Notes: a model not told the origin generated them from the sequence alone. A stretch of 64,000 bases of DNA from Chrysemys picta bellii (GCF_011386835.1 NC_088801.1:14632001-14696000), one strand, 5' to 3'; counted from the stretch's first letter, positions 2,100 through 53,307 are shown. Translations and numbers: made by a program.

Positions 2100-2770
2100 C
2101 AGACCCAGTCTACAGGACAGGGTTAGGTCAATATAAGCTGCCTTGTGTCGACCTAGCTGTGGAAATGTCTTCTCTTGAATTTGGCTCCCGCCAACATAAA
2201 TCCCTCTCTATGCCAATTTAGGCTACTCTAGCACTTTTGTCAGTAAAACTTTTGTCAGTCAGGGGTGTGAAAAAAAACACATCCTGACTGACATGTTTCA
2301 CCGACAAAAGCGCCGGTGTGGACAGCTCTCCTGCAGACATGGCTACCACCATTCGTTATGAGTGGATTAATTATGTCAACAGGAGAGCTCTCCCGTTGGC
2401 ATAGAGCTGCTACACATGAGACCTTACTGCAGTGCAGCTGCGACAGTACAGCCGTGCCACTGTAAGGTCCGTAGTGCAGGCATAGTAACATCACCTCCCC
2501 AGGCAGCGCAAAGTCACGATCAATGTAATTAGGTCGATGCAATGTCAGTATAGACACTGTGTTGCTTATGTTGACAGTTACTGGCTTTCAGGAGCTGTCT
2601 CGCAATGCTCCACACTGACAATACAATTGACACAAGTGCTCCTGGTGAGGATGTGCACCGCTGACACAAGGATCCAAGTGTGCACACACACACACTAGCA
2701 ATTTAATAACTGCAGTGGCTATAACCCAATGTAAATTAGGTCAATGTAATTTTGTAGTGTAGACATGGCC
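2100..2770. mobile_element. Cluster of nested or adjacent Harbinger-type MITEs
   Basis: Ends TAGTGTAGACATGGCC followed by TAA; internal AGAGCTCTCCC and GTGGACAG motifs shared with the 16041 MITE. Confidence 0.7.
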
Positions 2771-2984
2771 TAAGTTTAGTGGATATGTGATGGTAACCCA
2801 CACTGGGATAAAGTCTAAATATGTATTTTAGTCATATTTTAACATGTTAATTAACATGTCAGCTAATGTGATTTTAAATTCTAGTGTAGACACTACACAG
2901 ATGTTTGTTCTAGGGATTAATGACAATTAGCTGCAAATGTTCAGGGCCTGTCAACACTAGAATTTACAATCACGTTAGCATGTG

Positions 2985-4091
2985 TGTAACAATGAAACCA
3001 GCTCAAGCCCCTACCCAGTGACCTGGGTCAATTACACACCACCTCCTGGGCGCCTCTAAAGGGCAATACTTCCTCTCTCACAAGCACAGAGTCTGAGTGT
3101 AGCAAAGAAACTTTCAATAAAAGGAGGGAAGTAACCTGGCATTAAATTTGGAGAACACCACAAACATGATTCATAACATAAACCATGAGCAAAAGACCCA
3201 CCCCCAAGTAAGTTGGGCAGTGTCCTTTTCCCTCGGGTTCTTAAATCCAGCAACCAAAAGTCCCTTTAACATGCCTGTCCCTTCTCTGCACCCCACTCAC
3301 AGTTGTTGTCCTTGGTCAGGGCAGACTCACAGTTCAGAGGTGCATCTGCAGAGTTCACCTCCCACCCTGGGTGTGGAGGGGAGAGTAAGAAGGCACCTTA
3401 CTCGTTCCGCTGCCTGGGCACTCACTCACCATTCCTCTTCACTGGCCGATTGGCACTCCGCTCCTCTCCGCTAGCCACCCTGCCGGCCGATTGGCACTCC
3501 ACTCCTCTCCGCCAGCTGCCCTGCCAGCTGATCGCCACGCCTCTCCACCAGCCACTCTGCCAGCCAATCACCGATCCACTGGGATGTCTTCAGGTCTCAC
3601 AGCTCTCAGTAATTGTAGCTGTTAGTGGGGGAACCTCACTGCTGGTGCACACTAGACAGTGTCTTACATCAGAGATACTGCCCAAAAACACATCTAATGC
3701 TTAGACCTAGGTATCAGTGATTTCAGGTCTGAAGTGTGTAACAAGACTCTCAGTTAAGTCTAAATTGGCTCTTCTTACACAGTGAAGAGAGCCCACACAA
3801 CCAGGCACATATACCTATCCCCACCCTCTCTCAATTCACTGGGCTTTGGAACCCATGTCCCCCGCCTAGCAAGTGTCATTTAGTTGAGGGTGAGTCCTTC
3901 AATCAGGGTATGCCAAGTACAGTTCTGCTGCCCTTGATTCACACAACAAGGATAACAACCCTTTATTACTCCTGCCCCAATAACAAGAGGACTGGGGATC
4001 CAGCACCAGCCAAAAGTGATCATTTGGGCAAGCTATCCCATCATGCTGAGCACCTAGGCAGGGTGGGTGTGCCTATACAAACGAGATCAGC
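2985..4091. mobile_element. Truncated LTR-like element
   Basis: Starts TGTAAC, carries an internal imperfect ~40-bp tandem repeat (about 3440-3575), and ends abruptly at a hAT fragment. Class inferred from recalled turtle repeats. Confidence 0.55.
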
Positions 4092-29745: not shown

Positions 29746-30357
29746 CTGCAAAACAACCAAAGAGAGTGAAAATTATTTGAGAACAAGGATTTATACAATT
29801 AAGTTCTGAGTTAGACAGCTGTGAAAGGGAGGGATCTACATAGCAACTGACACAACAGCTCTACCCACACTTTCCCCCAGATCAGTTCAGACCCCCAAAC
29901 TCCCATGCTTTTCAGGGTACCCTCACCAACTACAGTTCTGTAGTAAACATTTTGTACACAATCTATGCACAGAGTGCTAGCATTCTGTGCCTCCTTGCAT
30001 AGCAAAAGAGAGCCTAAGTACATTAGCTATTAACTTAGAGCTTATGCAGCTTTCCTCCCCCGAAACATGGTGTTCTTATTTAGGCCTTAATCCTGCAAAG
30101 GCTTGTGCGTGTACAGAATGGAATGAACACAATGAAATGGGGAACCCTTTAGGATATGTGGGGCACTCAGCAGTGGACAGAACTTCTGCTGGTGGGAGGG
30201 ACATGCTGACCAAACTGAAAAGCACTGTCTCTGGACTCCCATCTTAGTCCACATTTGCAATCTGAATAACTGGTTGATGTTTATTGGGAAATAATTTTTT
30301 GAAACCAGACAATACAAGCTCAGTACCCCCCAAAAAATAAAATAAACTCTAACTTAC

Positions 30358-30457
30358 CATTGCCAGCTGCCTACCAATGTTCCCCACAGTAATGCCACCA
30401 GCAAAAAATATACATGGTAACCAGGAACGAACATAAAGGAAATCTGGAGATGTATAT
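30358..30457 (-). CDS. INSIG2: INSIG2 fourth coding exon (100 nt)
   Basis: Encodes [36 protein letters not shown] acceptor, GTAAGT donor. Confidence 0.97.
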
Positions 30458-30928
30458 CTAGAAAGGAATACAAGTTTGCATTATTATCTGTTTACTGCCA
30501 ACATTGAACTTAACCCTATGCACAATCCTTTCTTCAAAAAAACATATACTTTTAAAGTTAGGCACAGAGACATACTGAGAAATCTGGATATGGGAATATA
30601 TTAGCCTAAAGATACACACACTTGTAGTAGGAAGTTTGATTTCTTACTGCAAATATCAAATTTACTACCCATCCATTCATTCATTCTAATATCCTTTCTC
30701 TGTTTGATCCAGGTTGTTTTGCTGTTGGTAATGTAGCAGTTTTAGAACTCCAAACCAAAATCTCGGTCTTACACACACATAAGCACTCACAAGAATAGTC
30801 GAATTAAAGTTACACACGTTTAAGACTTAGCAAGTTCGGGGCTCAAGTTAAGTCAGATCTACCTTCAATGTTCTTGTTTACTAATCGAACATGAACACCA
30901 CTTAACCAGAAGAAAAATAAAGACTCAC

Positions 30929-31095
30929 TGGTAAACCCCATTGTAGACCAGAAGCTGTGATACCAAGGTGGCCAGAAAAGCAATTCCGATTCCAAGACCA
31001 AAGCCACTTCGTGATCTATCAAAGGTCCACCATAGTCCAATTGAAAGCGCTGCTAGTGTAAGAGACAACTGTATGTTGTTGGCAAAATCCACTTT
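30929..31095 (-). CDS. INSIG2: INSIG2 third coding exon (167 nt)
   Basis: Encodes [55 protein letters not shown](Q), including Q132, T136, W145 and D149 by human numbering. CAG acceptor, GTGAGT donor. Confidence 0.97.
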
Positions 31096-33572
31096 CTGTG
31101 GTCATTTGTTAAGGATCAGTTTTAAAGTGCCAACTTCAGGTGAAGTGCAATAATATTTACTTCATTAACTAACTTTTGATCTGAAAAATAACACAGTCCT
31201 ACATAATAACAACACCTAGCTCTTGCATAAACACGGCTCTCTTCATTTAATACAACTAAATGGTATAAGAATATTATCATAATAATTGTAAAGTATTATT
31301 TTATCTGTGTTAAGAAAAATATTTACTTAAAATGTTATTTTATGTTTACAGTATTTTTTTAAACCCACAATGTTGTCTCAGGACTTCGCTACAAACTGTA
31401 CAAGTGTTTTAAATACAAGGAGACTAGACGGAAATTAAGTAGAATACCAGATTTTTTGACAGATTTACTGTAAAAATATTACTGTTCAGATGAAGAAGTA
31501 CCAACAACAGTCCAGCCTCACCTGTTGCTCCTTTAATATCCTAAGGTTAAAGCTTTAAATCTAGCATTAAATTGCCAAAATGCCATATATCTTATGTTGT
31601 TGCCTACTGAAATAAGGTCATTTGGAAAAACAAAATATATTTAATTTCAATAACTATTACATGTTTTTAATTAGAATAGTATTTTTATCCAGTAAAACAT
31701 TTATTCAGAATCTTGTTTGCTTTTAAAAAAGCTACAGCTATGCAAATATGATAAATTAATAATCCTAGACACTTTTGTAGCACTTTGCCCTCTTCAAAAC
31801 ACTTCGCAAATATCAGCTAATTCATTTTCTCAACATCTCTGTAAGAAAGTACCGTTAAAGAGAGATTGTTAACACTCATAAGCCTAAACTTAGATTTAGG
31901 GGGTGACAAATGTATAGGTAAAAAGGTTGTCCTGGTCTCAACCACAGGAATCCACTGGCCTGGAGAAAGATCTAGTGGAGTAGTCTAACAAGAAATGGGG
32001 TTAACTTGATGGTAACAGAGAGAATGGCAGACACAAGGACACAATGACCAAAGTCAGATCAAATGCTGTTATTTTAAAGTGAGATGAACTGAAGCTCAGG
32101 CTTTTCAGGAAGCCACTTAGAAGAAAGTAGAGTTGCTACACTAATAATAGCTATGGAAGAGGCATTGTTTCCTTAAAAATGTGGAATGGCTGATAGCAAA
32201 CTGCAGAGGTGTTTGCTGAAAGTAATCTGACTCATGAGGAGTTCACCACCCAATTTTCAAGAAACATGTCAGAATTTCTTAGGGTCCTGTATCTGAATGT
32301 GCCCACAGTCAGGGGATGGTCAGAAGTTGGTGGCATCCACGTGACCAGATGGACACGTCTTCAAATATGGGAGAACTGAGGCCCGCAAGAGGATATTAGC
32401 AGACCCTAGCTTTGATAGCTCCAACTTTTCTGGCCACACTAGATAGGATGGGGTATTGTGGGAAAAGAACAATATCCATCCATAAGGTAAGGCCACTTGA
32501 ATGGGAACGCAGCCCATTTTCCATGCCTTCCTTTGGCATCTCATTTCATCCATTCTCTCTCTTCTGGATCTCTTTCAGCTGGAAACAAAAAAGAGAGCCA
32601 ACACCACATGGCCAGGGAGTTTGCATCACATCACCAGCAATTCTCTGCAGACCATAGTCTGGGACCTGATGCTAAAGATGAAAGAATGAGCCTTCTAGAG
32701 ATTCTTAATTTTCCTTTTAATTACTTATCTTTGAGTCTGGGTTTGGTAGACTAGTCAATTGCCTTAACTTGGAGAGGGAGATCCTATACACGATGACACA
32801 AAGCACAACTGCTCATGGGTTGCCAGTGAGACATCACAGTCCATTCTGAGGACATGTTTTTGTCCAATGGGCTTCTGGGAATCATGACTCCTTCATCTGG
32901 GGCTAGTATTAGTCTAGTGTAAAGGTGTACATGGATTTTTGAGAATTGATGCATTTCACATCATGCCACATTGATTCACTTGTAACTTCTCTCCTTTCCG
33001 CATAGGCTAAGTGACTTGCCTTAGAATATCTGCATCTCAGTTCCTCGTCTGTAAAATAGGGATAATAATGCTTATTCGCTTTTGTAAAATGCTTTGAGAT
33101 CCATGAATAACCAATGCCAAGTATTTTTTTCCTACCAATTTTTTCCCGTGCTTAGCAAAGTGCACACTCTTCATTGATGCTGCTGCACATGTGAAGTTTG
33201 GTCTTTAAAACTGTAACTGTATTGAGTTTACAATAAGTGCAAGAAGAGCAACCTTAAAAATTTCTCAGAGCATAAACTCCTTTCCCATATGTACTTGAAT
33301 AAACTCTAAAAAAAGACACAAATATATATTTAAAAAAACAGGGAGATTTCAGTTTAAGTGGTATTTCTAGAAACTTATATGCATAACCTTCATTAACTAG
33401 TGCAGCTACTGACATTCTATAACAGTTTTAACTCTAAGCTACACTCTGTATGTCCTTTTAAAACATTATACATCATATTTTAGAAACAGTTACATTGTGA
33501 GCAGCTATTTAACCTTTGGTTCACCAGAAACTAATTTGTTACTGCAAACTTCATTACCACATAGAAGGATAC
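31096..33572 (-). other. INSIG2: U12-type (minor spliceosome) GT-AG intron of INSIG2
   Basis: 5' splice site GTATCCTT at 33572-33565; branch sequence TCCTTAAC at 31115-31108, about 12 nt from the CAG; no polypyrimidine tract. Confidence 0.93.
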
Positions 33573-33697
33573 AGCACTAGCATGATTGATACCCACAAAG
33601 ACTGCTACACATCGCATTACACTGGACCATTCTCGCTTAAATTTATGTGGCTCTCCCAGATGTCTGTCCATGCAGGGATACAACAACCCAATCACAG
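33573..33697 (-). CDS. INSIG2: INSIG2 second coding exon (125 nt)
   Basis: CAG acceptor at 33698-33700; encodes (A)[41 protein letters not shown]; donor GTATCCTT. Phase matches the previous exon. Confidence 0.97.
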
Positions 33698-33958
33698 CTG
33701 TGGAAATATGAAAGAAAAATTAACAATTAAAGCATCTGCAATATTTAGCTGCACTAGAGACAATCTAGACCAAGGTGGTTCTGCAACCATAAAAAACAAA
33801 TATTTTTCAAACACTGTCAAGATTTAAAAATAAAAAGAAAGGCATTTCAGATAGTTTAGGCCCAAAACATAAGTTATTATTAAACGGCTGCCTTAAAATT
33901 CAATGAAAACAGCTATATGTTTGTCATTTAAAATTCCCTTACAGCATCTTCAGTCACA

Positions 33959-34148: not shown

Positions 34149-36723
34149 ACAGCTTTGCGCTGGTGCATAATACCAGGAAGGGGTGAAAATAAACTAAATG
34201 TGGGATTTTCTAAACATCGTCAATACTTTTCCTTAAACACTCACTATACCGTAGTTCCACCTATAAAGACAATTCCCACACCAGCTGGGAGGCACACGTG
34301 AAAGTTTAATGTTACGCTGTTTTAGTATGTAAGAAGCAAGGGCTCAGAAGGCAGCTTTGAATTCTAACACCTATTATGGTGATAGGTCGGATGCATCTCA
34401 CAGGAGAGGTTTTCCATGTGCCAGAGAGGAACCTGATCTACAGGGTTTAAGAAATAAATGAAAAATCACCAGTGAAGCAGCATCAGAAATTGCCATGTAA
34501 CCAGCATTCTAGCTGAGGACGTGGGGCCCAACTGATCGCTAACAGTGGTAGATGAAAAAAGTCTCCGTAAATAGCACTGATGGAGGGCTATGAAAAATCT
34601 CTCTTCATTGGTGTCTTTAGGATGAGTAAACTAGGCCTAATGCCTAAGGGGTCGTTCAAAGAATTACAAATATTGTGGTTTTGCAGATCTGTTTACTGGG
34701 GGTGATGGAGAGGGGGAAGTCATACCCCAGAGACATATTAATGTCAATGAGATTGCGTAGGTAGGGATAGCAGAACAACACGAGTTATCCAGCAGATTGC
34801 CTTGAGTAGGTTGCAAACATTATTCCCTCAGGTAGCACTTGTATGCTAGACAGACAAGAGCAGGAGAGGAAGAATTGTGAAACATTCCTACAAAGAGACG
34901 CTGTAGCATTTAAAGCTGGAAGAAATCGACTAAGAACATGCAACCTTGTAAGTCAATTTCAGCATAGAAGCTCAGCTTGTCACCTCAAGACTGTGACAAA
35001 GCCTGAACCTTAGAGTTTCCTGGTAAAGAGTTTGTAGGTATGTAATGGTCTCCATTGCTTGCTAAGAGAGTGACACTATTGCAAGTGGGACACACTCATT
35101 TCAACCCCCAGAACAAATCCTTTAGGTAGAAACAACTGTAGTAGACTGTGCACTGAAAATAGTGTGGGAGCATGGTGTGTAGCTAAATGAGAACAGTAGG
35201 CATACCACTGACCCTTTAAATCTTTTCAGGGCCTGTTTCCCCTCTCCCCTTGTCCCATGGACACAAAAAGCCCATCTTACTAACAGATAATTTTACAGAG
35301 CTACATCCATGTATTCTCTTTTACAAAACAAACCTGAGATCACTTACTGTAAAAAGACATAATAGATATGTTGTTGGATAGCTAAGCCCCGCTACAAATA
35401 GGAAAGAAAAAATCCTTCGAGATGGCCAAATCAAACTGCTCTATCAGTAAATCAAACCCCTCATGAGCTCTATGTCAAGACAACCAATTTAAGCATAAAA
35501 AAATATGCAGCAAATACAGGGTACCATAGCAGCAAGATTAGAGAATAAGAGCTAGGTTAGACAGGCAACTTACAGATACAACAAGTATATAACTGTGACC
35601 AAAATATTCCAAAGACAGAGAGAACAAAACTGACATATTGAGACAGCTATTTGGACAGTTTCCTTTCAGATCAGGCTCTTCTATGAAATCTGTGGTGAAA
35701 TGGTTCAACACCATACCAAAAGAAAAGTAATTAGATAAAATATTCGACTTAAAAATTACCTTTAGCAAAACCTTGATGCCAGAAGTACCCAATAGACCAA
35801 AGGTAAGTTTACTGATTTGTAGTACCACCCAAAGAGGCAAATGGACTCCTCACTCATTAAAATCAAGCTCAAGGAAGATACTGTCTTTAAAATAAAGGTC
35901 TACTTATAATCGAATTCCCCCATCCAGCTGCTCAGAATAATCCACTGGTAAAGTGTTATATTGACCCATGGGAAAGGTCTTACACTGTGTTCTGAAGCCC
36001 AAACTCTGTCAGACTTTTAAAGGGAGCAGATTTCAGAGGACATCCATTGTTAACAATGTACCATTGACAAGAGCAAAGCAGCACCTTGTGCCTATATCTC
36101 CTTAAGATATAGGGGGACAGCTGCATTCCAGACCACGTGGAGCTTTACAGATCTAATCCTGCACCTTGACCCGCTATCAGAAGCGAACAGGAAGCTGGGG
36201 CAAAAATGGCATACTCTCATTACGGCTTACACCAGACAAGGCAAACTACTCCATGCTGCAAAATCTGGGATCTCCAGGTTCCTTTCCAGAGTTGCCCACA
36301 AAGGGCATGGCAGTAATCTAGCCTCAAGGTTACAATCCTTTGGATTTCAGTGGATTGCCAAACTCAGTATTCCTAATCCTGAAAACTGAGCATAATCTTC
36401 TGACTCAAGAATTCAGCACAGCAGGGCTAATATTTAGTCCTGCCTCAGTGCAGGGGACTGGACTAGATGACCTATCAAGGTCCTTTCCAGTCCTATACTT
36501 CTACGATTCTATGATTCACCCTACAACTTCTGTAAAAATGTACAAAGATCTTTTGGAGAGGAAACAGACAGATGGGAAAGGGAGCAGGACTAGATCCAAA
36601 ATTTTAAATCTTCCATATTTTTCTATTAATGAAGGATTTTTAATTTCCTCACTACCACCCCCACCGCCGCGCACACACACACACACACGAAACATACAGA
36701 CAGTTGGCACCTTCTGACATTAC

Positions 36724-36967
36724 CTGAGGCTGTGCCACAGCAAGGTGGTACCCACCAAGCTGAAGAGAAGATGCTTGTGATCACATCTGGTGGAAAGAGC
36801 GTGACATTTCTCTGAATCTGTAGCAAGTTTAATACTAATGCAAGAAACACGCCAATAAAAAACAGCACTAATCCACGAATCACCAAGTTTATGCCATGAC
36901 TGGTTATAGATGAAATGTATGGACCACACTTTTTTGATATGGTTGGTGCTGCATCGCTTTCTGCCAT
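36724..36967 (-). CDS. INSIG2: INSIG2 first coding exon (aa 1-81, 244 nt)
   Basis: Translates [81 protein letters not shown], recognisably INSIG2 (short N-terminus, KKCGPYISS). ATG at 36967; donor G|GTAAT at 36723. Confidence 0.97.
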
Positions 36968-37079
36968 GACGCACGAGGCAATATCCACCAGTGTGACTGG
37001 GGAGGATCCACTTGTAGTCGGTATTTTAACACTCCCAATTTAGGATGTACCCCAAACCCTGTGAAAACAATAGACACAG
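36968..37079 (-). other. INSIG2: 5' UTR part of the INSIG2 first coding exon; acceptor at 37058 or 37079
   Basis: Two AG acceptors: GTTTTCACAG|GG (exon start 37058) and TTTTTTTTTCAG|CT (exon start 37079). Confidence 0.65.
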
Positions 37080-40824: not shown

Positions 40825-41823
40825 CAGGACCGGATTAATGCAGGGACTAAGGGGGGCCCTGGTGCAGCAGGGCCCAGGCAGGTTGCCTGCATGCCGTGGC
40901 CTCACACTGCTCCCGGAAGGGGCCAGCTGCTGGCATGTCCCTGCAGCCCTGGGGGAGGGGGGGAGATGGCTCTGCGTGCTGCCCATGCCCCCAGCACCAT
41001 CCCTGCAGCTCCCCTTGGTCAGTTCCGGCCAATAGGAGCTGCGGGGTGGCGCGGGCAGCACACAGAGACATGCTGTCCCCCTCACCTTTGGGGCGCGCAG
41101 AGACATGCCAGTAGCTGGCCGCTTCCGGGAGCGGCATGGGGCCATGGCATGCAGCCTGCCTGAGCCCTGCTGTACTGACGGCTGGGAGCCACCTGTGGCG
41201 AGTGCCTCCCGACTGTAGCTTGTACCTCACACCCCTTACCCCAAATCAGAATCCCCTCCTGCACCCAAATTCTCTCCCAGACCCTGCACCCCAACCCCCT
41301 GCCCCAAGTCAGAATCCCCACCTGCTCCAAACTCCCTCCCAAAGTTCACACCCCTCACCCTCTCCTGCACCCCAACCCCCTGCCCCAGCCCGGAGCCCCC
41401 TCCTGCACCAAACTCCCTCCCAGACCCTGCACCCCAACCCCCTGCCCCAGGTCAGAATCTCTACCTGCCCCAAACTCCCTCCCAGAGCCCACACTCCTCA
41501 CCCTCTCCTGCACCCCAACACTCTGCCCCAGCCCGGAGCCCCCTCCTGCACCAGACTCCCTCCCAGAAAGAAACTAATATAACAGATGTTCTAAGGTAAG
41601 AAGTAGGCTATTTTGAATTAACTTAACTATATTCTACATGTTTTAAGACTGAAATGTAACCACAGAACGGCTTTGTGTTAAATAAAAGCCGAGTTTAGTA
41701 TAGCGTTAATAACCTCGATGCCATAATTGTGGTCATTTTGTTTTAAACTAGGAAAAAGACTTGTATACAGGGTCCCCACAAAATCTAATAGCCGCAGGCC
41801 ACAGGAGAGTTAATCCGGCCCTG
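40825..41823. mobile_element. Composite non-autonomous hAT element with C-rich tandem interior (INSIG2 intron 1)
   Basis: TIRs CAGGACCGGATTAA / TTAATCCGGCCCTG; 8-bp TSD CATAGGCC / CATACGCC. Confidence 0.88.
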
Positions 41824-42159: not shown

Positions 42160-42935
42160 TGACTCCCGCCTGGGGGAGTTCACTACATAGGATCCCAAAG
42201 AGGGAACCCGGCGCCACCCCACTGAACACGGCATCTGAAGTCACTTCCTCCAGGGGAAAGGTTTTAGCAGCGAGACACCACCAGCCTAATCAGGGGTGCA
42301 ACTCGGCAGCGGCTCTGTCCCATCCCAGCTGCATCCCCCAGAAGGCACAGTCCGTATCTCCCCCCGGCTTACCGCCCTCGCCACTCCCACTGCAAGTGCC
42401 CAGCCCCAGGGCAAGTGTCGCCACAGCCCCCTTACTTACTCTGCCTCCGCCATCTTCTCCCTCCCTTGCCTCAGTCTCCGCCTCGCGCAGGCTCCACGGC
42501 GCTCAGCTGGGCTGGGGCGAACAGCTGACTCGGGGCACGAGGGATTCCGTGGGGCCCGGCCGCTGCAGACGAGCTCGGGGCAGTGGGGCTTCCGCGGGGC
42601 CAGTCAGGGCGCTTGCAAAGCACGGACCGGAACGGAGGTTCCCCTTCGCTCCTGTAGTCACGAAGCAGGAGGCGAGCAGCTGGGAAAAGGGGAGATGGGG
42701 ACGTGCCAGAAACAAGAGAGAGATTCCTGGAAAAAGTGCAAGAAGAATGTAGTCTAGTCTGTAATTTATAGAGAGGTGGGAAATGCACCCATCAAGCAAC
42801 GGCTAAGATAAAGAGATAGCGAGGAAGGAGGTAAAAGTGCAAAAGGAAACAGTAATTCGAAGAAGTAACCAGTGCTAAGAAATGGGAGGGATGCAAGCTA
42901 AAAAAGGCACAGTGGAGAAAAAACGGAAGTGTGAT
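42160..42935 (-). promoter_or_regulatory. CpG island / INSIG2 promoter
   Basis: Dense CpG and high GC at about 42160-42720. ETS-like motifs CCGGAA (about 42627) and CGGAAGT (42924-42930), YY1 motif, no TATA box. Confidence 0.75.
42436..42530 (-). other. INSIG2: Probable non-coding exon 1 of INSIG2 (5' boundary uncertain)
   Basis: Lies in the only clear CpG island upstream of the coding exons. Minus-strand GCAGA|GTAA|GTAAGG gives two donor candidates (42439, 42435). YY1-like AAGATGGCGG sits just upstream. The TSS is inferred. Confidence 0.7.
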
Positions 42936-43900: not shown

Positions 43901-45900
43901 CCCCACTATTGCTGTGCTTAATAAATATCACTAACAGAGAGATAAAGATTTACTCATTTGCAATTAATTTCAAAGAGTGCTTAAAAATTGTTGGCCTGAA
44001 TTGGGCCCTTTCTGATACGAAGATTTGTGCACTTACTTAATGTTGTTTAACAGTGTTGGTTTGCTGACTAGGGCAAAATGAACAGCGATTACTAATCCAG
44101 GAATCCCATTTTTATCACTAATTTGTAGACTTCCTTGGGGAGACGCTACAATGTGAGGCACACAACCTCTGGTAAACTAACTTGATTAACAACAAGCAGG
44201 AAGAACAATAAATAAGAACATCCTGAGGCTTGTTATTTATATTTTTATCTATGTGAGAGAAATACCATTGGGAAAGAATACTATTACTCATTCCATTATG
44301 GTGTTAGTCAATGAACTTTCTTTTTATTCTTATTTCACGTGTCTTAAATACAATATAATGGATTTAGAATACTTACAAATCAAGTCGACTATTGCAAGAA
44401 CTTTGCTATATCCACTTTACAAAATCACTTATATGATGATTGGAACGGGGGTTGTTGTTGCACATAAGAGTGCAAACCCCAATACAATTGCAAGAAGACT
44501 GATTGGTTAATATGGAATTATTTTATATTATGTATTACAGTAGCACCCAAGGCCCTAGTCACAGCCAGGGCCTCATTGTGCTGGACTATGTACAAATATA
44601 TAGTAAGAGACAGTCCTTGCCACAAAGCACTTACAATCTAATTTAAGGCAAGACACAAGAGATTGTGACAGATATATTAAGGAATGGGGGAAGGAAGAAG
44701 CCGTTAACTGCGATGGGAGTACATGATTACAGAAGTGTGCTAGGTATGCAGTTACCTACTTTCAAGTCATTCAATGTCTGTTTTTGTTATATACAATAGA
44801 GATGAACAAAAAATATTGATCTCAGTTACTCCTACAGCCAACTGCTTAGTCAGTGTGTTTTATGTGATGATATTTGACTTACAGCTTTTGGATCCCGCAA
44901 GTTTTTTTAATCAGATAAAATGACCTTTTTGGATGTAAGATAAACTTCTTAGGACAGCTGCCTCCCCAAGACAAAGCATACTTATGGCTCAGGAACTTTA
45001 TTCCAAGAGAAGGCCTGTCAGTCCACTGGGAACAACCTTATAGTAAAAGCTTTATACAAACAAAATTAATGCATTCGAGTAAGGAATAGGTTGAATGTAT
45101 GAAGACTACAATTGATTGATGGATCTTTTCCTTCCTTGTCATATATATGGCCTAGTAATGTTTTATCTATAAATAAATTAAGGTTACTTATAGTCCGGGC
45201 CACCAAGTGTTTAGTACAATAAAATTACAAGGAACTAATTTGTAAAGAAAAATTAAATTGATCACATTAGAAATATTGACTGTATGACTGGAGGATGGGG
45301 GGAATGAAAGTCTAATATGTGACAGCATGAAAATAAATCAGTGCAGCTCCAAGAACTTCAGTGGGCTATGCCAATTTGTGCCAGCTGAAGATCTACCCAC
45401 CTTTCAATGTGGCTGTCATAGAAGAGAAGAACATCAAAAAAATGAAGGGGGGGGAGAGATAGGAAGTTGTGTTTGAATTTGAGATTTCAGAAGTAAGCAA
45501 ATCAGAAAAGAGGTAGACATAAAGCCAAAATGTAGACTCTAGGGATTTCGTACTTAGGTTGACATTGACAGGAATTACAATGAAACCACACAGAAAAGGC
45601 ATCTTTTTTGGAGAGCACTAAAAGGCTCTTTCTTTACACAGACCACAGAACAAACAACAAGATTCAGAATATCCTGGATTTAGTCCTCTGAAATGAATAT
45701 TTCCCTTAGTATGATGAACAAGATAACAAAAAGTTGTTTAACATAAAGGAGCGCCCAAGATGATCACATAACTAAAAAAACAAAAAACAAACAACTAGAA
45801 TGGCTTTCCCCCCCGCACATTTGTCTCAGTGTGCATGCTACTTTTAAAAAACACTGGTATTTTGTCCCAGTTTTTATGAATTCCTGCAAATTCTGGCCAC

Positions 45901-45955
45901 CTACCTCCGGAGACCCCTACTAACAAAAACCCAAACCCTGGCTACGAGGAGCCCC
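45901..45955. repeat. Stray degenerate 1.5 units of the 36-bp minisatellite
   Basis: CCCTAC TAACAA AAA CCCAAA CCCTGG CTACGA GGA aligns in register with CCCTAC CCATAG GAA CCCTAA CCCTAG CTCCAA GTA. Confidence 0.6.
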
Positions 45956-46435
45956 CAGCCAGAACCCTCATCTCCCCCAGACTCCAATACTCTGCCCTAG
46001 CCCTGAGCCCCCTTCCACACCCCAACCCCCTCATCCCCAGCCCCTCCGCAGAGCCCGCACCCCCAACCAGAGCCCTCATCCCCCACAATCCAACCCTATT
46101 CCCCAGCCATGAGCCCCCTCCCACACCCTGAATCCAACATCCCTGGCCCCACCCCAGAGCCTTCACCCCTAGCCGGAGCCCTCATGCCTACACCTAACCC
46201 TCTGCCCCAGCCGTCAACCCACTCCCGCACCCCAAACCCTTCTGCCCCAACCCCACCCCAGAGCCTGCACCCCCAGCCAGAGCCCTCACCCCCCACAGCC
46301 CAACCCTCTGCCCCAGCCCTGAGCCCTCTCCCAAACTCCTTACCCCTCGCTCCCCTCCCCCACCACATATCACCTCCATATTGGTGTACATAACAAAATT
46401 CATTACACACATGGACGTAAATAAAGGGAACACTG
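45950..46435. mobile_element. Truncated non-autonomous hAT element (C-rich interior, one TIR)
   Basis: CCCCAGCCC/GAGCCCC-type interior ending in AAAGGGAACACTG (reverse complement CAGTGTTCCC, a hAT-type TIR). No left TIR found. Confidence 0.7.
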
Positions 46436-48639
46436 GTGGGGAGCCCCACCCATAGGAACCCTAACCCTAGGGAGGGGAGTCCTAGCCATACAAACCCTAA
46501 CCCTAGGGCAGGGAGTCCTAGCCATACAAACCCTAATCCTAGGGCGGGAAACCCTACCAATAGGGACCCTAACCCTAGCTCCAGGTACCATCCCCAAAAC
46601 AAAATTAATCCTTGCTCCAAATACCCTACCCCTAGGAACCCTAACCCTAGGACGGGGAGCCCTACTCTTAGGACCTCTAACCCTATGCCGGAGAGCCTTA
46701 CCCACAGGATCCCTAACCCTACCTCCAAGTACCTTACCCACAGGAGCCCAAACCCTACTTCCCAGAACCCTACCAATAGGAACCCTACCCCTACCTCCAA
46801 GTACCCTACCCATAGGAACCCTAACCCTAGGGTGCAGAGCCTTATCCATAGGAACCCTAACCCTAGCTCCAAGTACCCTACCCATAGGAACCCTATCCCT
46901 AGCTCCAAGAACCCTACCCATAGGAACGCTAGCCCTAGGACTGAGAGCTGTACTGATAGGAACCTTAACCCTAGCTCCAAATACCCTACCCATAGGAGCC
47001 CTAACCATAGGGCAGGGATCCCTACCCATAGGAACCATAACCCTACTTTCAAGTACCCTACCCCTAAGAACCCTAACCCTAGGGTGGGAAGCCTTACTCA
47101 TGGGAACCCTAACCCTAGGGTGGGAAGCCTTACCCAGGGGAACCCTAACTCTATGGTGGGCTTCCCTACCCATAGGAACCCTAAACCTAGCTCCAAGTAC
47201 TCTGCACATAGGAATCCTAACCCTAGGGCGGGGATTCCTACCCATATGAACCCTAACTCCAAGTATCCTACCCATAGGAACCCTAACCCTAGGACTGAGA
47301 GTCGTACCGATAGGAACCCTAACCCTAGATCCATGTACTGTACCCAGAAGAACCCTAACCATAAGGCGGGGAGCCCTATCCATGGGAACCTAACCCTAGT
47401 TCATTGTACCCTACCCAAAGGAACCCTATCCCTTGGGCGGGAATTGCTACCCATACAAACCATAACCCTAGTTCCAAGTACCCTCCCAATAGCAATGCTA
47501 ACCAATGCAGGAGCCCTCCCCTTAGCAACCTTAACCCTAGCTCCAAATACCCTAAACTTAGGAACCTTAACTCTAGGGTGCAGAGCCCTACCTATAGGTG
47601 CCCTAGCCCTAGGGCAGGGAGCCCTACCCATAGGAACTTTAACACTAGCTCCACGTATCCTACCCAGAGGAACTGTAACCTTAGGGCTGGGAACCCTATC
47701 CATAGGAATCCTACCCCAACTCCAAGTACCCTACCTATAGGAATCCTATCCCTACCTCCCAGAACCCTACCAATACGAACCCTAACCCTAGCTACATCTA
47801 CCCTACCATATGAACCTTAACCCTAGGGTGGGGATCCCTACCCATAGGAACCCTACCCCTACCTCCAAGTACCCTACCCATAGGAACCCTAACCCTAGGG
47901 TGCGGAGCCTTACCCATAGGAAACCTAAACCCAGCTCCAGAAACCCTACACATAGGAACCCTAACCCTAGCTCAAAATACCCTACCCACAGGAGCCATAA
48001 CCCTAGCTCAAAGTATACTACCCATAGGAACCCTAACCATAGGGTGGGGATCCCTACCCGTAGGAACCCTACCCCTACCTCCAAGTACCCTACCCATACA
48101 AACCCTAACCCTAGGGTGGGAAGCCTTACCCATAGGAACCCTAACCCTATGGTGGGCTGCACTACCCATAGGAACCCTATCCCTGGGGGTGAGAGCCCTG
48201 GCCATAGGAACCCTAACCCTAGCTCCTAGTACCCTACCCATAGGAACCCTAACCCTAGCTCCAAATACCCTACCAATAGGAACCCTAACCCTAACTCCAA
48301 GTACCCTACCCATAAGAACCCTAACTTTAGGGTGCAGAGCCAAACCCATTGGTGCCCTAACACTACCTATACAAACCCTAACCCTAACTCCAATTACCCT
48401 ACCCATAGGAATCCTAACTCTAGGTCAGAGAGCCCTACCCATAGGAACCCTAACACTAGCTCCAAGTACCCTACCCATAGGAACTTTAGCTCTAGGGCGG
48501 GGAGTCCTCCCCAAAGCCACACTAATCCTAGCTCCAAATACATTATTTATAGGATCCCTAACCCTAACTCCAAGTACCCTACCCATAGGAACCCTAATCC
48601 TTAGGTGCAGAGCTCTACCCATACAAACTCTAACCCTAG
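46436..48639. repeat. 36-bp telomere-like minisatellite, about 61 units
   Basis: Consensus CCCTACCCATAGGAACCCTAACCCTAG plus a 9-bp slot (CTCCAAGTA or GGYGGGRAG-like), readable throughout. Length 2204/36 = about 61 units. Confidence 0.95.
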
Positions 48640-48958
48640 TGAGGTTAGCAATTGTTCAGCTTAGCAGGTGATATTGACAACAGGCTGGCTACCAGAACAT
48701 GTGCCTTGAAAGCAGTATAAATGAAGAAGAGGAGAACAATGAATTGATGGATGAGAGAGAAGCAGACAGGAAGAGACTCAATAATCTACATTGGTCTGTA
48801 GGTCACAATGTGGCCACGTGTGACATAAATGGCCAAGTTCCTCCTGGATCTATGTGTGTGTGTGTGTATATTGGGTAAGAAGAGAACGCTCCTTTGCTTC
48901 TGCTCAGCGCAGTGCTGTTGGGGGAGCAGGAATTGCTTCCTGCTAATGCTCCCATGTG

Positions 48959-49318
48959 CAGGGCCGGTGCTACCATTAAGGCAAACTAGGCGGTTGCCTA
49001 GGGTGCCAAGATTTGGAGGCGCCAAAAAGCGGTGCCCCCAATTTTTTTTTACAGCGTTCCTACGCCCCCTCACTGAGCGCACGGTCGCAACTCCACTTCT
49101 CCCACCTCCCAGGCTTGCAGCGCCAATCAGCTGTTTGGCGCCGCAAGCCTGGGAGGGGAGGAGAATTAGAGCGGGGGTGGCGCCTCAGGGCAGGGGGAGG
49201 AGCAGCCGCGGGGGGGCGCCTCAGGGCGGAAGGGGGGCAGGGAGCTGCCGCAGGGCTGGGGGGGGGGCGCAAGGTGGAAGTTTCGCCTAGGGCGCGAAAC
49301 TTCCTTGCACCGACCCTG
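48959..49318. mobile_element. Young GC-rich hAT MITE
   Basis: TIRs CAGGGCCGGTGC / GCACCGACCCTG; perfect TSD CCCATGTG (48951-48958, 49319-49326). Confidence 0.92.
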
Positions 49319-50102
49319 CCCATGTGTTAACTGAATGGGGGGCATAATGAAGCTAGGGCTATATTACTGCCACCTTTCTACACCAGTTAGTGTGTGAGTT
49401 GGTGGGGAGGAGTGCACAGTGCATGAAGTGTAAGAGTGCAGAGATGCCAGGCAGCAGAATGTACTGCTCTAGAGAAATTCTTTCAGAGACCCTATTCTCC
49501 CTAGGGTCTCCCTCTCTATTGCAGCTCTGATGTATCCCCTCCAGCCTGCCTCCGGCTGTCAAATCCAGAATCAAGTTCAAAGGGTTTGGTAATCAAACTC
49601 TTGGTGAGGCAAAACAGCTCCTGAGGTACCAGGCGGAGAATTCAGGAGGTTGAGCCTGAATGGCAAAGAAAGACATTGGGAAAGAAATGAAATGAGCTGA
49701 ATTTAAACAAGATTATAGCAAACAACTAAATCAAAATTCAGAGGCAGTCATTTAAAAGAGTCAGGGGAACTGCTGAGGGAGAAGCTTACAAAAATCCAAA
49801 GGCAAAGCAAATTTAAAGAAACAGACATCAGGGGTGATACATATGTGTGGCTGTCATCATGGCCCACACTGGGGATTGGAGCATGGACATCTAGGAGTAA
49901 GAGTGTAGGTTGCTATAGCTTGGGGCTGTGATAGGCTCACATCCTCTGTGGATTAGGCAAAGAGGGGAAACACTCCCTTTGACTAGTGGAGACGATACTC
50001 AGAAGAAAACCCCTCCTACTGTTGCCTGTATTTTTCAGAGGGCTACAGATATCCAGACAGAGGACTCTGTAAACTGCTTCTTCTCAGGTTTGAGGACAAA
50101 TT

Positions 50103-50190
50103 TGTGGATACACACGTTCGACTTTGTAATATCGGTTCCACAAATTCGCTTTAAGTAAAATCAAACTACTCTCGTAGTGTAGACATACCC
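50103..50190 (-). mobile_element. Inverted copy of the Harbinger left terminus with intact TIR
   Basis: Ends TAGTGTAGACATACCC. 50103-50170 is the reverse complement of about 50195-50262 with 2-3 mismatches. Confidence 0.9.
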
Positions 50191-50298
50191 TTAGGGTAGT
50201 TCAATTTTACTTAAAGCGAATTTGTGGAACTGATATTACAAAGTCGAACGTGTGTATCCACACTAAGGACAGTAATTCGACTTTGTGAGTCCACACTG

Positions 50299-50916
50299 CA
50301 TGGACTGGTGGGACCGCATAGTGCTGCAGGTCTGGGATGAATCCCAGTGGCTGCAAAACTTTCGGATGCGTAGGGAACTTTCCTGGAACTTTGTGAGTTG
50401 CTGTCCCCTGCCCTGAAGCGCAAGGACACCCGGATGCGAGCAGCCCTGAATGTCCAGAAGCGAGCGGCCATAGCCCTCTGGAAGCTTGCAACGCCAGACA
50501 GCTACCGGTCAGTCGCGAACCAATTTGGAGTGGGCAAATCTACCGTGGGGGTTGCTGTGATGCAAGTAGCCAACGCAATCATTGAGCTACTGCTCTCAAA
50601 GGTAGTGACCCTGGGAAATGTGCAGGTGATCATAGATGGCTTCGCTGCGATGGGATTCCCAAACTGCGGTGGGGCTATAGATGGAACTCACATCCCTATC
50701 CTGGGACCGTACCACCAGGCCAGCCAGTACATTAACCGAAAGGGCTACTTTTCAATGGTGCTGCAAGCACTGGTGGAGCATAGGAGACATTTTACCAACC
50801 TCAACGTCGGATGGCCGGGCAAGGTTCATGATGCTCGCGTTTTCAGGAACTCTGGTCTGTTTAGACGGCTGCAGGAAGGTATTTACTTCCCGGACCACAA
50901 AATAACTGTTGGGGAT
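50299..50916 (+). pseudogene. Harbinger (HARBI1-like, DDE_Tnp_4) transposase fragment
   Basis: ...IALWKLATPDSYRSVANQFGVGKSTV...CGGAIDGTHIPI...YINRKGYFSMVLQALV...GWPGKVHDARVFRNS...KITVGD. Frameshift near 50365; C-terminal catalytic part missing. Confidence 0.92.
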
Positions 50917-51078
50917 CTTCTCGTAGATCTTTGCATTCCATTTTTTCGATCGCAGCTCCGAAAGCACGGACTCATCGCCCCACACAGCGATCAGATCCAA
51001 GACTTCCCGATCAGTCCATGCTGGGGCCCTCTTTCTATTCTGCGATTGCATGGTCACCTCTGCTGGAGAGCTCTGCAT
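50914..51078 (-). pseudogene. Harbinger Myb/SANT-like DNA-binding protein, N-terminal fragment
   Basis: MQSSPAEVTMQSQNRKRAPAWTDREVLDLIAVWGDESVLSELRSKKWNAKIYEKI, a trihelix/Myb-like pattern typical of Harbinger ORF2. Convergent with the transposase. Confidence 0.88.
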
Positions 51079-53307
51079 TGTTGCCAGTGCAGCTGAGCTC
51101 GCCACGGTGTCCAAACAGAAAATGAGATTCAAACTGGCCAGACAAGAAAAGGAATTCAAATTTTCCCGGGGCTTTTCCTGTGTGGCTGGTGGCTGGTCAG
51201 AGCATCCGAGCTCGGACTGCTGTCCAGAGCGTCAACAGAGTAGTGCACTGTGGGATAGCTCCCGGAGCTATTAGCGTCGAATTCCATCCACACCTACCCT
51301 AATTCGACATGGCCATGTCGAATTTAGCGCTACTCCCCTCGTCGGGGAGGAGTACAGAAATCGATTTAAAGAGACCTCTATGTCGAACTAAATAGCTTCG
51401 TTGTGTGGACGGGTGCAGGGTTAATTCGAGTTAATGCTGCTAAATTTGACATAACCTCCTAGTGTAGACCAGGCCTTACATGCATGCAGCTCCATGGAAA
51501 TCAATAGGGTTCCACAAGTGTAACAGAGAATAGAGTTTGGCCCAAGGGGTCTGTAGTGTGTGAATGTGAGTGTGTCCCCCCCACACACACACACACACCC
51601 TGTTCTGCAAGGAGCCTCTCACATACATTATGTTGGAGTCTGACTAAGAACGAGTAGTCAGCAGTGTCTGCCTCTTCTTTATTGCAAAATCCAGACAACT
51701 ACATCAGGTACAACTGTGCATCTGAGTATCATCTTAACAGTAAAAAAGGTCTTTATTTTATAAACAGTATATAGCAAATATATCTGTACAAAATACCCTA
51801 CAAATCTCCTGGAAAGCCTTCTTGAAAGTGCTCCATCCATACAGAAGGCCTCTGGAAGGTCTTCAGACATGTGGAAAAGTAAGCACATTTCCCACAGATT
51901 TCCTTTATTCTGGCAGCTAAGGCAGCTGTCTTGTCTCTTCTTCAAAGAAGGAGGCAGACTAGCCATTCTGGTTAGCATGCAGCTGGGACACATGCAAAAA
52001 TCAGAACAACTGATGTGTTTTGCAACATATGGGAAGCTTGTTATGCACAAAGGGGCAGCACACTGTGAATGTTTCCAATATCTCGGCAAGAGTACAACCT
52101 GCTATAGATAAGTTGTATAAAATTGGCTTTTCAACAAGTTTGGCATTTCGTAGACAGAAGCATAACAAAGCAGTAGCAATGTTAAACTATCAGCTCACAT
52201 CTGTTCTTACATGTGAAAAGGGTTATTACTTATCTCACATTATGGATGGAATATAAAATCCTAGGGACGATATCAGTGGCAGTTTTTGTTTGCTTTATTT
52301 GTTTATTTTACTGCTTGCAGAAGGTGCTGGATCACCAGCTCCAGAGACTAAAGCCCTTTATTTATCTACTGAACAGGTGCAGCATGGACAGTCACAGCAC
52401 AAGTTTCCCCACACCAGCCTGCCAACATGTCTCAGCAGTGATCTAGTCTCCATACACGTTCAGTCCTTGGCACCTCTGCTGAGACTGCTACCTAGGGAGT
52501 GGTGTAGTGCCAACGACGCTGGTGGTTTCTGTGATATGGAGACCTGCCCACTAGGAACATGACCAAGACAACCACATTACATCATACACCAAACAGCCAC
52601 AGACACCCATCATATTGTAGGATTTAGGTTTTAAATAATGCCACTGACATTATAGGTTTGATCACTACCAAATTAGGCCAGATTCAGAAGACCTAGACGT
52701 GAAGGGCCTCCTACTGCATTATTAATTCCATTGGACATCCAGATTCTAACAGGAGTTAAACGAAACTAAAACACAGGAAATCAATGCAGGAACAAAGAAC
52801 TTCAGCAGCATACTTTAAAAAAAAAAAAAGAAAAGAAAAGGAAGGTTTGTGCGAATTTAAATGCGCTAAAACAATGAAGAGAAAGGTCACAGAAAGGAAA
52901 TTGAAAATGTATAGACATAAAGTAATGCATTTCCCAAGCATTATGTGTGTGTCATTTGGCAATAAATACAATAGAAATCAAAACAAGGTCAAGATGAATG
53001 GATAAGCAAGTGGGAAGAAAGAAGCACATGCCAGCCTAAGCAAATGACTGGAAGGATTGGAGAATTAAATAAGAAAAATGAGGAGGGAAAAAAGGTAGGG
53101 GGTGCAAATATGGTTGCTCACCCTGGGCCCTAAAATGCCTACTGACTGCGCTGCCCTCATCCCCCAGGGGAAGCCAGCAATCTCACAGGCCTTGGCCTCT
53201 CTGACCTGCCCCTCTCCTCCTCGCTTTTTAAACTCTTTCGTCACCATGGTAGTTTTTGGGAAGGGTGGGAGGACCTCAGTTTCACAATTTGCCCTGGGTC
53301 TCCAAAA

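What the first reader, a model, noticed from the sequence alone, without database searches (positions are those of the whole stretch)
46436..48639. 2.2 kb telomere-like minisatellite whose consensus unit holds a full G-quadruplex motif and a TRF-type site, upstream of INSIG2
Seen: the consensus unit on the minus strand reads CTA GGG TTA GGG TTCCTAT GGG TA GGG + 9 nt. That is four G3 tracts with loops of 3, 7 and 2 nt, matching G3N1-7G3N1-7G3N1-7G3 once per 36 bp; the plus strand is the matching i-motif pattern. The consensus also contains CTAGGGTTA. Many individual units are degenerate. Established: YTAGGGTTR is the half-site bound by the TRF1/TRF2 Myb domains, and G3N1-7 motifs fold into G4 in vitro. 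Inference: this is not a simple (TTAGGG)n interstitial telomeric tract but an amplified higher-order unit. It could act as a shelterin-binding, G4-forming element about 4 kb upstream of the INSIG2 promoter. The G-rich strand is INSIG2-sense, so any upstream-initiated transcript would be UUAGGG-containing and R-loop prone. I do not recognise this repeat family.
Basis: partly seen in the sequence, partly recalled or inferred. Interest (0 to 1): 0.75.

Follow-up and report, generated by a model that had tools for sequence, protein, structure and literature searches.

The report
Old telomere-like 36-bp minisatellite, ordinary
A real 2.2-kb array of about 62 decayed 36-base repeats that contain telomere-like motifs lies 4 kb upstream of a turtle's INSIG2 gene, but it looks like one copy of an old scattered repeat family that is decaying neutrally, not a purpose-built telomere-protein or G-quadruplex element.

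Summary
Window 46436-48639 is a 36-bp tandem array of about 62 units. Its minus-strand consensus has four G3 tracts (loops 3, 7, 2) and CTAGGGTTA. INSIG2 lies downstream on the same strand.

1. G-tract positions are no better kept than the other core positions (0.86 against 0.89). Only 12 units keep a full G4 motif and 26-27 keep YTAGGGTTR. That is what independent column-wise decay predicts (10.2±2.3 and 22.8±2.5).
2. The repeat is multi-locus. In three related species, contigs at least 80% alike pile up to 10-80 times single-copy depth on the array. No 31-mer of the array occurs more than 3 times within it, and paralogous contigs were seen directly.

The scan found the same 36-bp telomere-like family before, on another piece of this genome (s1-320950).

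The array is CpG-depleted (o/e 0.11). It diverges between species like its flanks. It had no coverage in the one possible RNA run. Neighbouring high-copy G-rich repeats carry more G4 motifs per kb.

Verdict: an ordinary, old, neutrally decaying minisatellite. TRF binding and G4 folding in vitro remain plausible for a minority of units but are untested.

The parts
46436..48639 (-). 36-bp telomere-like minisatellite, about 62 units, G-rich on the minus strand
   Evidence: TRF rows with periods 36, 72, 108 and 144; unit table; per-column conservation; no other copy in the window
48330..48639 (-). More degenerate edge of the array (units 1-9), with two register slips (unit spacings of 30 and 33 nt)
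   Evidence: Unit scores of 15-32 out of 36 and spacings of 30, 33 and 30 nt; the TRF period-36 row splits at 48363-48365
46436..48329 (-). Better ordered body of the array. It shows traces of old multi-unit block duplications: units 15-17 against 21-23, and about units 12-20 against 41-50.
   Evidence: Block identities of 0.83-0.96 at lags of 6 and 29-30 units; otherwise no decline of identity with distance
45880..46377 (-). Context, not part of the array: an adjacent, very high-copy G-rich (minus strand) repeat of about 106-bp period, about 60 nt from the array end
   Evidence: TRF 45952-46333; summed contig depth 5.6e4-1.3e5 against single-copy 17 in X1; a related copy at 41253-41567; 7.2 G4 motifs per kb
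48640..48833 (.). Context: single-copy flank on the far side of the array
   Evidence: Depths of 18.5, 39.8 and 3.2 equal single-copy depth in the three DNA runs
42250..42750 (-). Context: CpG-rich, promoter-like stretch of INSIG2, about 3.7-4.2 kb downstream of the array on the minus strand

Best explanation
This is one locus of an old, dispersed, non-coding minisatellite family of turtle genomes. The 36-bp unit is built from two 15-nt telomere-like halves (CTAGGGTTAGGGTTC and CTATGGGTAGGGTAC) plus 6 nt. It was amplified long ago by replication slippage or unequal exchange, including some multi-unit block duplications. Since then it has decayed by ordinary point mutation without homogenisation. 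The G4 motif and the TRF half-site belong to the ancestral unit, inherited from its telomere-like seed, and selection is not maintaining them. Shown here: the array, its anatomy, the neutral pattern of decay, the multi-locus nature of the family, and orthologous presence in related species. Inferred: the amplification mechanism, the telomeric origin of the seed, and the absence of function.
For: The array and unit are shown. The two-halves substructure shows in identity of 0.48 at lags 15 and 21 against about 0.2-0.25 background, and in the second half aligning to telomeric sequence at 10 of 12 positions (shuffle P 0.003-0.04). Consensus frequency is 0.858 at G-tract positions, 0.886 at other core positions and 0.56 in the spacer. 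Intact G4 units number 12 against 10.2±2.3 under the column-shuffle null, and TRF half-sites 26 against 22.8±2.5. Unit identity does not fall with distance (0.65-0.71 at all lags from 1 to 24), so there has been no recent turnover. CpG o/e is 0.11. Summed depth of contigs at least 80% alike is 10-80 times single-copy on the array in three species. Paralogous 2.5-kb single-copy-depth contigs match about 280 nt at roughly 80% (records 6 and 13). Array 31-mers are 96% unique and none occurs more than 3 times. Orthologous contigs in organisms E and I differ by 0.85% and 1.7% inside the array, against 1.4% and 1.8% in the flanks (Fisher p 0.20 and 0.88). There is no Pfam hit and no 3-base periodicity for the long ORFs. 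An earlier scan note, s1-320950, reports a second 1.5-kb array with 36-bp units elsewhere in this genome.
Against: Neutral decay in sequence does not exclude a function that needs only a few intact units or only repeat density. There are 26-27 half-sites, and 8 adjacent unit pairs both keep one; TRF1 dimers tolerate any spacing. The consensus folds as a G4 in silico (-8.4 against -3.9 kcal/mol with RNA parameters). Copy-number figures come from contig depths, which the tool warns are not copy numbers. The only RNA evidence is one run whose RNA status is a guess. The family's genome-wide distribution was not seen directly.
Confidence: 0.8

Rival explanations
1. Functional cis-element: the array recruits TRF1/TRF2 (shelterin) and/or forms G-quadruplexes or R-loops that modulate the INSIG2 promoter 4 kb away.
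For: The consensus has a canonical G4 motif and a YTAGGGTTR half-site. There are 26-27 half-sites and 25 POT1-type TAGGGTTAG nonamers. TRF1 dimers need two half-sites with no spacing constraint (PMC3241663). TRF2 is reported at extratelomeric G4s in human promoters (PMC6879327, abstract). The array is retained in at least three related species.
Against: There is no excess conservation of G tracts or co-retention of intact motifs. The family is multi-locus. CpG o/e is 0.11, unlike a regulatory island. Divergence equals that of the flanks. The putative RNA run has no contigs on the array. Neighbouring junk repeats have denser G4 motifs. Hairpins between units nearly match the G4 energy in multi-unit context (-22.2 against -24.3 kcal/mol).
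Confidence: 0.05
2. The array is the internal tandem-repeat region of a mobile element, and the family was spread by transposition rather than by independent or segmental amplification.
For: The family is multi-locus. The neighbourhood is dense in transposable elements: a high-copy G-rich repeat at 45880-46377, a MITE-like element ending at 49318, and a Harbinger-type DDE_Tnp_4 remnant at 50398-51096.
Against: No terminal inverted or direct repeats, and no target-site duplication, link the two sides of the array. The immediate flanks are at single-copy depth: 48637-48833, and 46377-46435 inside a unique contig. The array begins and ends cleanly at unit boundaries.
Confidence: 0.12
3. Relic of a chromosome end or telomerase-healed break (a true interstitial telomeric sequence) that was later remodelled and amplified in place.
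For: The core holds TAGGGTTAGGGTT, and the second half is also telomere-like.
Against: The longest perfect telomeric stretch is 15 nt and there is no hexamer array. The same composite 36-bp unit occurs at other loci (s1-320950). FISH found no interstitial telomeric DNA in the painted turtle, and ITRs are rare in turtles (PMC4524486; PMC7348932), although short ones would escape FISH.
Confidence: 0.05
4. Protein-coding repeat: the 434-aa (+) and 326-aa (-) open frames across the array are translated.
For: Long ORFs exist because the period of 36 is a multiple of 3.
Against: There are no Pfam hits. Conservation shows no coding-type third-position relaxation (phases 0.83, 0.90 and 0.89 in the core). 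ORFs are open in several frames on both strands. No RNA contigs cover them.
Confidence: 0.01

Closest known systems
Satellites or minisatellites whose monomers embed short TTAGGG clusters (for example the chaffinch satellite cited in PMC7348932, ref. 68; hamster telomere-like satellites, refs 20-21)
   Same: A longer repeat unit that contains one or two telomeric hexamers plus non-telomeric spacer, amplified in tandem at non-terminal sites.
   Different: This is a low-copy, dispersed, kilobase-scale minisatellite rather than a megabase heterochromatic satellite. The unit sequence was not found in the searchable literature. Relation to any catalogued repeat (Repbase, Dfam) could not be tested.
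Human G-quadruplex-forming minisatellites CEB1 and CEB25 (PMC3486850)
   Same: A minisatellite of a few tens of bp per unit whose consensus carries four G3 tracts on one strand.
   Different: CEB1 and CEB25 are GC-rich, subtelomeric and G4-competent in most units, with demonstrated G4-dependent instability. Here only 12 of 62 units keep the motif, one loop is 7 nt, the array shows no sign of recent turnover, and folding is untested.
Short interstitial telomeric sequences (s-ITS/s-ITR)
   Same: Telomere-like sequence at an internal, euchromatic, intergenic position, below FISH detection (PMC7348932).
   Different: s-ITS are runs of the hexamer itself. Here the period is 36 and the longest perfect telomeric run is 15 nt.
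Extratelomeric TRF2/G4 promoter sites (PMC6879327) and human TERRA promoter repeats
   Same: The idea that shelterin proteins bind G-rich, non-telomeric DNA near genes.
   Different: Those sites lie in CpG-rich promoters or CpG islands. This array has a CpG o/e of 0.11 and lies 4 kb from the promoter, and no binding data exist.

Membership tests
Interstitial telomeric sequence (hexamer array) | Tandem run of TTAGGG hexamers (several perfect or near-perfect copies) | tested here: not met
   Period 36; only 3 TTAGGGTTAGGG; longest perfect telomeric stretch 15 nt
G4-forming minisatellite (CEB1/CEB25 type) | Four or more G3+ tracts with short loops in the repeat unit | tested here: inconclusive
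   Met by the consensus, but only 12 of 62 units keep it, no more than neutral decay predicts
G4-forming minisatellite (CEB1/CEB25 type) | Demonstrated G4 folding and G4-dependent instability | not testable with these tools
   Only an in-silico RNA-parameter fold: G4 -8.4 against hairpin -3.9 kcal/mol for the 27-mer, and -24.3 against -22.2 for a two-unit stretch
TRF1/TRF2 duplex binding site | Two YTAGGGTTR half-sites per dimer, any spacing (PMC3241663) | tested here: met
   26-27 half-sites; 8 adjacent unit pairs both intact. This tests the sequence requirement only.
TRF1/TRF2 duplex binding site | Actual occupancy by shelterin in chromatin | not testable with these tools
   No ChIP or CUT&Tag data are available here
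Dispersed minisatellite/satellite family | The same unit in tandem arrays at several unlinked loci | tested here: met
   10-80 times single-copy summed depth in 3 species, and paralogous contigs at single-copy depth; array 31-mers occur at most 3 times internally; a second locus noted by the scan (s1-320950)
TE-internal tandem repeat | Array bounded by shared element sequence with TIRs, LTRs or a TSD | tested here: not met
   No flank-to-flank repeats; immediate flanks are single-copy
CpG-island repeat promoter (TERRA-type) | CpG-rich repeats | tested here: not met
   CpG o/e 0.11, with 14 CpG in 2204 nt
Coding tandem repeat | Family match or codon-position pattern | tested here: not met
   No Pfam hit; no coding-type third-position periodicity

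The most novel reading that the evidence does not exclude
The 36-bp family is a set of dispersed, evolutionarily retained shelterin-docking arrays in turtle genomes. Each offers dozens of flexibly spaced TRF half-sites plus a few G4-capable units, and this copy would tie the INSIG2 promoter region to telomere or TRF2 status. The similar roughly 30-fold family abundance in three species, and retention of the orthologous array, do not exclude this.
Probability: 0.04. Interest if true: 0.55.

Novelty: new member of a known kind. Interest (0 to 1): 0.15.

Why it matters
It matters little as it stands. The finding documents a telomere-like composite minisatellite family in a turtle genome. That is useful for repeat annotation, and as a caution that consensus-level G4 or TRF motifs in repeat arrays say nothing about the state of individual units. 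Cytogenetic work found no interstitial telomeric DNA in the painted turtle by FISH (PMC4524486). Arrays like this one show what telomere-like sequence below FISH resolution looks like in such genomes. If shelterin did bind these arrays, they would be a natural system for studying extratelomeric TRF binding in a long-lived reptile, but nothing here points that way.

Tried and rejected
1. Exact-pattern scans for the 26-nt consensus core found nothing in metagenome contigs or genome contigs.
2. A 16-nt sub-pattern gave 59 single chance matches. Nine contigs from one metagenome (Ga0049107) share an unrelated dispersed repeat that happens to contain the 16-mer. None holds a telomere-like array.
3. 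A literature search for the unit string on either strand gave 0 papers. Searches for turtle satellitome and ITS papers found no description of this unit.
4. Rfam at gathering thresholds found nothing in the window.
5. A search for TIRs, TSDs or direct repeats joining the two flanks found none. The inverted-repeat hits inside the array only reflect the CCCTAGGG and GGGATCCC palindromes at B-type unit junctions.
6. A strict 72-bp higher-order repeat was rejected. Even lags are only marginally better than odd lags, and A/B spacer alternation is not significant (p 0.085).
7. The coding reading of the 434-aa ORF was rejected.
8. The sigma-70 promoter and terminator scan is irrelevant for a vertebrate and gave nothing above its shuffles.
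9. Findings look-up by sequence was blank.
10. I did not build a joined INSIG2 coding model. The exons were searched one by one by reference. They had been located with short motifs recalled from memory, used only inside a local script as a lead.

Full report
**What is there.** Tandem Repeats Finder reports a period-36 array at 46438-48365 (53.9 copies, 69% matches, 1% indels). Alternative rows with periods 72, 108 and 144 extend to 48639. Chaining the best 36-mers in register gives 62 units on the minus strand, from 48639 down to 46435. There are only a few register slips, and the first nine units are more degenerate.

The remaining 9 nt come in two forms: TACTTGGAG in 30 units and CTCCCCACC in 27. 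The two forms alternate only loosely: 34 of 56 transitions, shuffle p 0.085. Unit identity at even lags is only marginally above odd lags. So there is no strict 72-bp higher-order repeat.

The unit has an inner structure of two 15-nt halves (CTAGGGTTAGGGTTC and CTATGGGTAGGGTAC, 12 of 15 alike) plus 6 nt.
- Identity at lags 15 and 21 is 0.48. Background is about 0.2-0.25, and identity at lag 36 is 0.66.
- The second half aligns to telomeric sequence at 10 of 12 positions (shuffle P 0.003-0.04).
- The array has no other copy in the 64-kb window.

**Context.** Four open stretches on the minus strand match Pfam INSIG (PF07281): 36629-37039, 33534-33719, 30928-31101 and 30352-30480. Their E-values run from 5.6e-6 to 2e-14.
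- I located them with short motifs recalled from memory, inside a local script only.
- I confirmed them exon by exon, by reference.
- The first coding exon begins with an INSIG2-like N-terminus. That judgement rests on my own recollection, not on a test.
- A CpG-rich stretch (o/e 0.55-0.79) lies at 42250-42750.

**Is the G4/TRF content more than a property of the consensus?** No.
- There are 12 non-overlapping G3N1-7 x4 motifs in 62 units, 27 YTAGGGTTR sites, 25 TAGGGTTAG and only 3 TTAGGGTTAGGG. The longest perfect telomeric stretch is 15 nt.
- Mean consensus frequency is 0.858 at the twelve G-tract positions, 0.886 at the other fifteen core positions and 0.56 in the spacer. G tracts are therefore not better kept than loops.
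- I shuffled each column independently among units 2000 times. Observed against shuffled: 10.2±2.3 G4 motifs (observed 12, P 0.27), 22.8±2.5 half-sites (observed 26, P 0.14), and 9.0±2.2 units with all twelve G intact (observed 11, P 0.25).
- Intact motifs are thus exactly as frequent as independent site-by-site decay predicts. Nothing suggests that whole motifs are being retained.
- Changes at G are mostly G>A transitions (8.7% per site).
- G4 potential is not special to this array within its neighbourhood. The array has 5.4 motifs per kb. The adjacent high-copy G-rich repeat at 45880-46435 has 7.2 per kb, and its relative at 41200-41600 has 10 per kb.
- In silico, with RNA parameters and G4 energies allowed, the 27-mer prefers a G4 (-8.4 against -3.9 kcal/mol).
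- In two-unit stretches, inter-unit hairpins come close to the G4 energy (-22.2 against -24.3 kcal/mol).
- Those hairpins are helped by the CCCTAGGG and GGGATCCC palindromes at B-type junctions.

**Is it a single-locus curiosity or a family?** It is a family. One run search found the 4-kb stretch in runs labelled as nine organisms (A-I) at word shares of 0.41-0.79, which means close relatives. I laid Logan contigs of three DNA runs (organisms A, E, I) and one putative RNA run on 44500-50400, at 80% likeness or more.
- Single-copy depth beside the array is about 17, 44 and 3.5 in the three DNA runs.
- Across the eleven array bins the summed depth is 178-779, 380-3504 and 33-170. That is 10-80 times single-copy, with a mean near 30 times in all three species.
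- The tool warns that summed contig depth is not a copy number, so I take this only as 'many more copies exist'.
- This locus cannot produce the excess by itself. 96% of its 31-mers are unique within the array and none occurs more than three times.
- Yet individual consensus-like contigs have 11-15 times single-copy depth: 189, 587 and 54 in the three runs.
- Paralogues are also seen directly. Contigs of 2491 and 2528 nt at single-copy depth match about 280 nt of the array with some 50 mismatches and 15 gaps (records 6 and 13). Two further contigs are about 80% alike (records 11 and 20).
- Independently, the scan had already noted a 1.5-kb array of 36-bp telomere-like units on another piece of this genome. 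A follow-up agent judged it one locus of an old family scattered through turtle genomes (s1-320950). My depth and paralogue evidence agrees with that note. I could not see that locus's sequence.

Whether the family is catalogued in Repbase or Dfam could not be tested. Its unit string occurs in no searchable paper.

**Age and turnover.** Orthologous contigs from organisms E and I cover parts of the array. Mismatches are 9 in 1061 (0.85%) and 17 in 1012 (1.7%). The flanks show 39 in 2784 (1.4%) and 28 in 1574 (1.8%). Fisher p is 0.20 and 0.88. The array therefore evolves like its flanks, neither constrained nor hypervariable in sequence.
- Units differ from their consensus by about 13% at core positions and from each other by about 31%. 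This is an order of magnitude more than the between-species divergence.
- Identity does not fall with distance along the array (0.65-0.71 at lags 1-24).
- The only structure is a few old block duplications: units 15-17 against 21-23 at 0.92-0.96, and roughly units 12-20 against 41-50 at 0.83-0.88.

I infer that amplification is much older than the split of these species, and that the array is no longer being homogenised.

CpG o/e is 0.11, with 14 CpG in 2.2 kb. That is the signature of long-methylated, non-regulatory DNA and unlike CpG-island repeat promoters.

**Transcription and coding.** The putative RNA run (X19; its RNA status is a guess) has depth 0 from 46667 to 48833. It does have contigs on the neighbouring high-copy repeats. 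This is weak evidence against transcription. The long ORFs (434 aa on +, 326 aa on -) exist because 36 is a multiple of 3. They have no Pfam match, several frames are open on both strands, and conservation shows no coding periodicity.

**Mobile-element origin?** The neighbourhood is full of transposable elements.
- A G-rich repeat of about 106-bp period lies at 45880-46377, at thousands of times single-copy depth.
- A high-copy element lies at roughly 48960-49318, with short terminal inverted repeats by eye.
- A Harbinger-type DDE_Tnp_4 remnant lies at 50398-51096 (E 1e-15), next to a 70-nt inverted repeat.

However, the array's immediate flanks are single-copy: 48637-48833, and 46377-46435 inside a unique contig. 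No inverted or direct repeats or target-site duplication link its two sides. TE carriage is thus not supported, though it is not excluded for the family as a whole.

**Comparison with known things.**
TRF1 dimers need two YTAGGGTTR copies, with no constraint on spacing or orientation (PMC3241663). The sequence requirement for binding is therefore met at eight adjacent unit pairs and many more distant ones. Occupancy is untested.
- TRF2 binding at extratelomeric promoter G4s is reported in human cells (PMC6879327, abstract).
- G4-forming human minisatellites CEB1 and CEB25 are known (PMC3486850).
- Satellites with embedded TTAGGG clusters are known in birds and hamster (reference list of PMC7348932).
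- FISH found no interstitial telomeric DNA in the painted turtle (PMC4524486), and ITRs are rare in turtles. Short arrays below FISH resolution are expected (PMC7348932).
- That the genome is a painted turtle's is stated only in another scan note (s1-335702). I did not test it.

**Verdict.** The structural part of the interpretation (a composite amplified unit, not a plain ITS) is right. The best explanation is an ordinary, old, neutrally decaying locus of a dispersed telomere-like minisatellite family (confidence 0.8). Interest is low.

Noticed in passing
window 45880-46377 and 41253-41567: A very high-copy repeat, C-rich on + and G-rich on the INSIG2-sense strand, with periods of about 106 and 143 bp. 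Summed contig depth is 5.6e4-1.3e5 against 17 for single-copy DNA. It carries 7-10 G4 motifs per kb, denser than the telomere-like array. One copy sits about 60 nt from the array and the other in the region of INSIG2 intron 1.
   Followed up: partly
window about 48960-49318: A high-copy element of about 360 bp (depth 7e4-1.4e5) with short terminal inverted repeats by eye (CAGGGCCGGTGC ... GCACCGACCCTG) and a sharp right boundary at 49318, where the loose ends of hundreds of contigs diverge. It contains its own 36-bp, two-copy repeat at 49155-49227. It is probably a MITE.
   Followed up: partly
window 50016-51096: A Harbinger/PIF-type transposon remnant. A 232-aa ORF at 50398-51096 (+) matches DDE_Tnp_4 (E 1.1e-15). 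It is preceded by a 70-nt, 94% inverted repeat at 50103-50172 / 50193-50262. The region is high-copy (depth up to 2.3e5).
   Followed up: partly
window 46436-47740 (+) and 46403-47383 (-): ORFs of 434 and 326 aa run through the array only because the period (36) is a multiple of 3. They have no Pfam match. Gene finders could mistake them for repeat proteins.
   Followed up: yes
window 45462-45706: The only unique-sequence contig of the putative RNA run X19 in the laid stretch: 245 nt, 1 mismatch, depth 2.1. It could be a low-level transcript or DNA carry-over between the INSIG2 promoter and the array.
   Followed up: no
loci L001, L008, L014, L025, L031, L036, L042-L044 (metagenome Ga0049107): Nine contigs of one metagenome share a dispersed repeat more than 150 nt long, apparently from a eukaryote, that happens to contain the 16-mer GGGTTCCTATGGGTAG. 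It is unrelated to the turtle array.
   Followed up: partly
window 3444-3546: A 41-bp repeat in 2.5 copies (83% matches), C-rich. Not examined.
   Followed up: no
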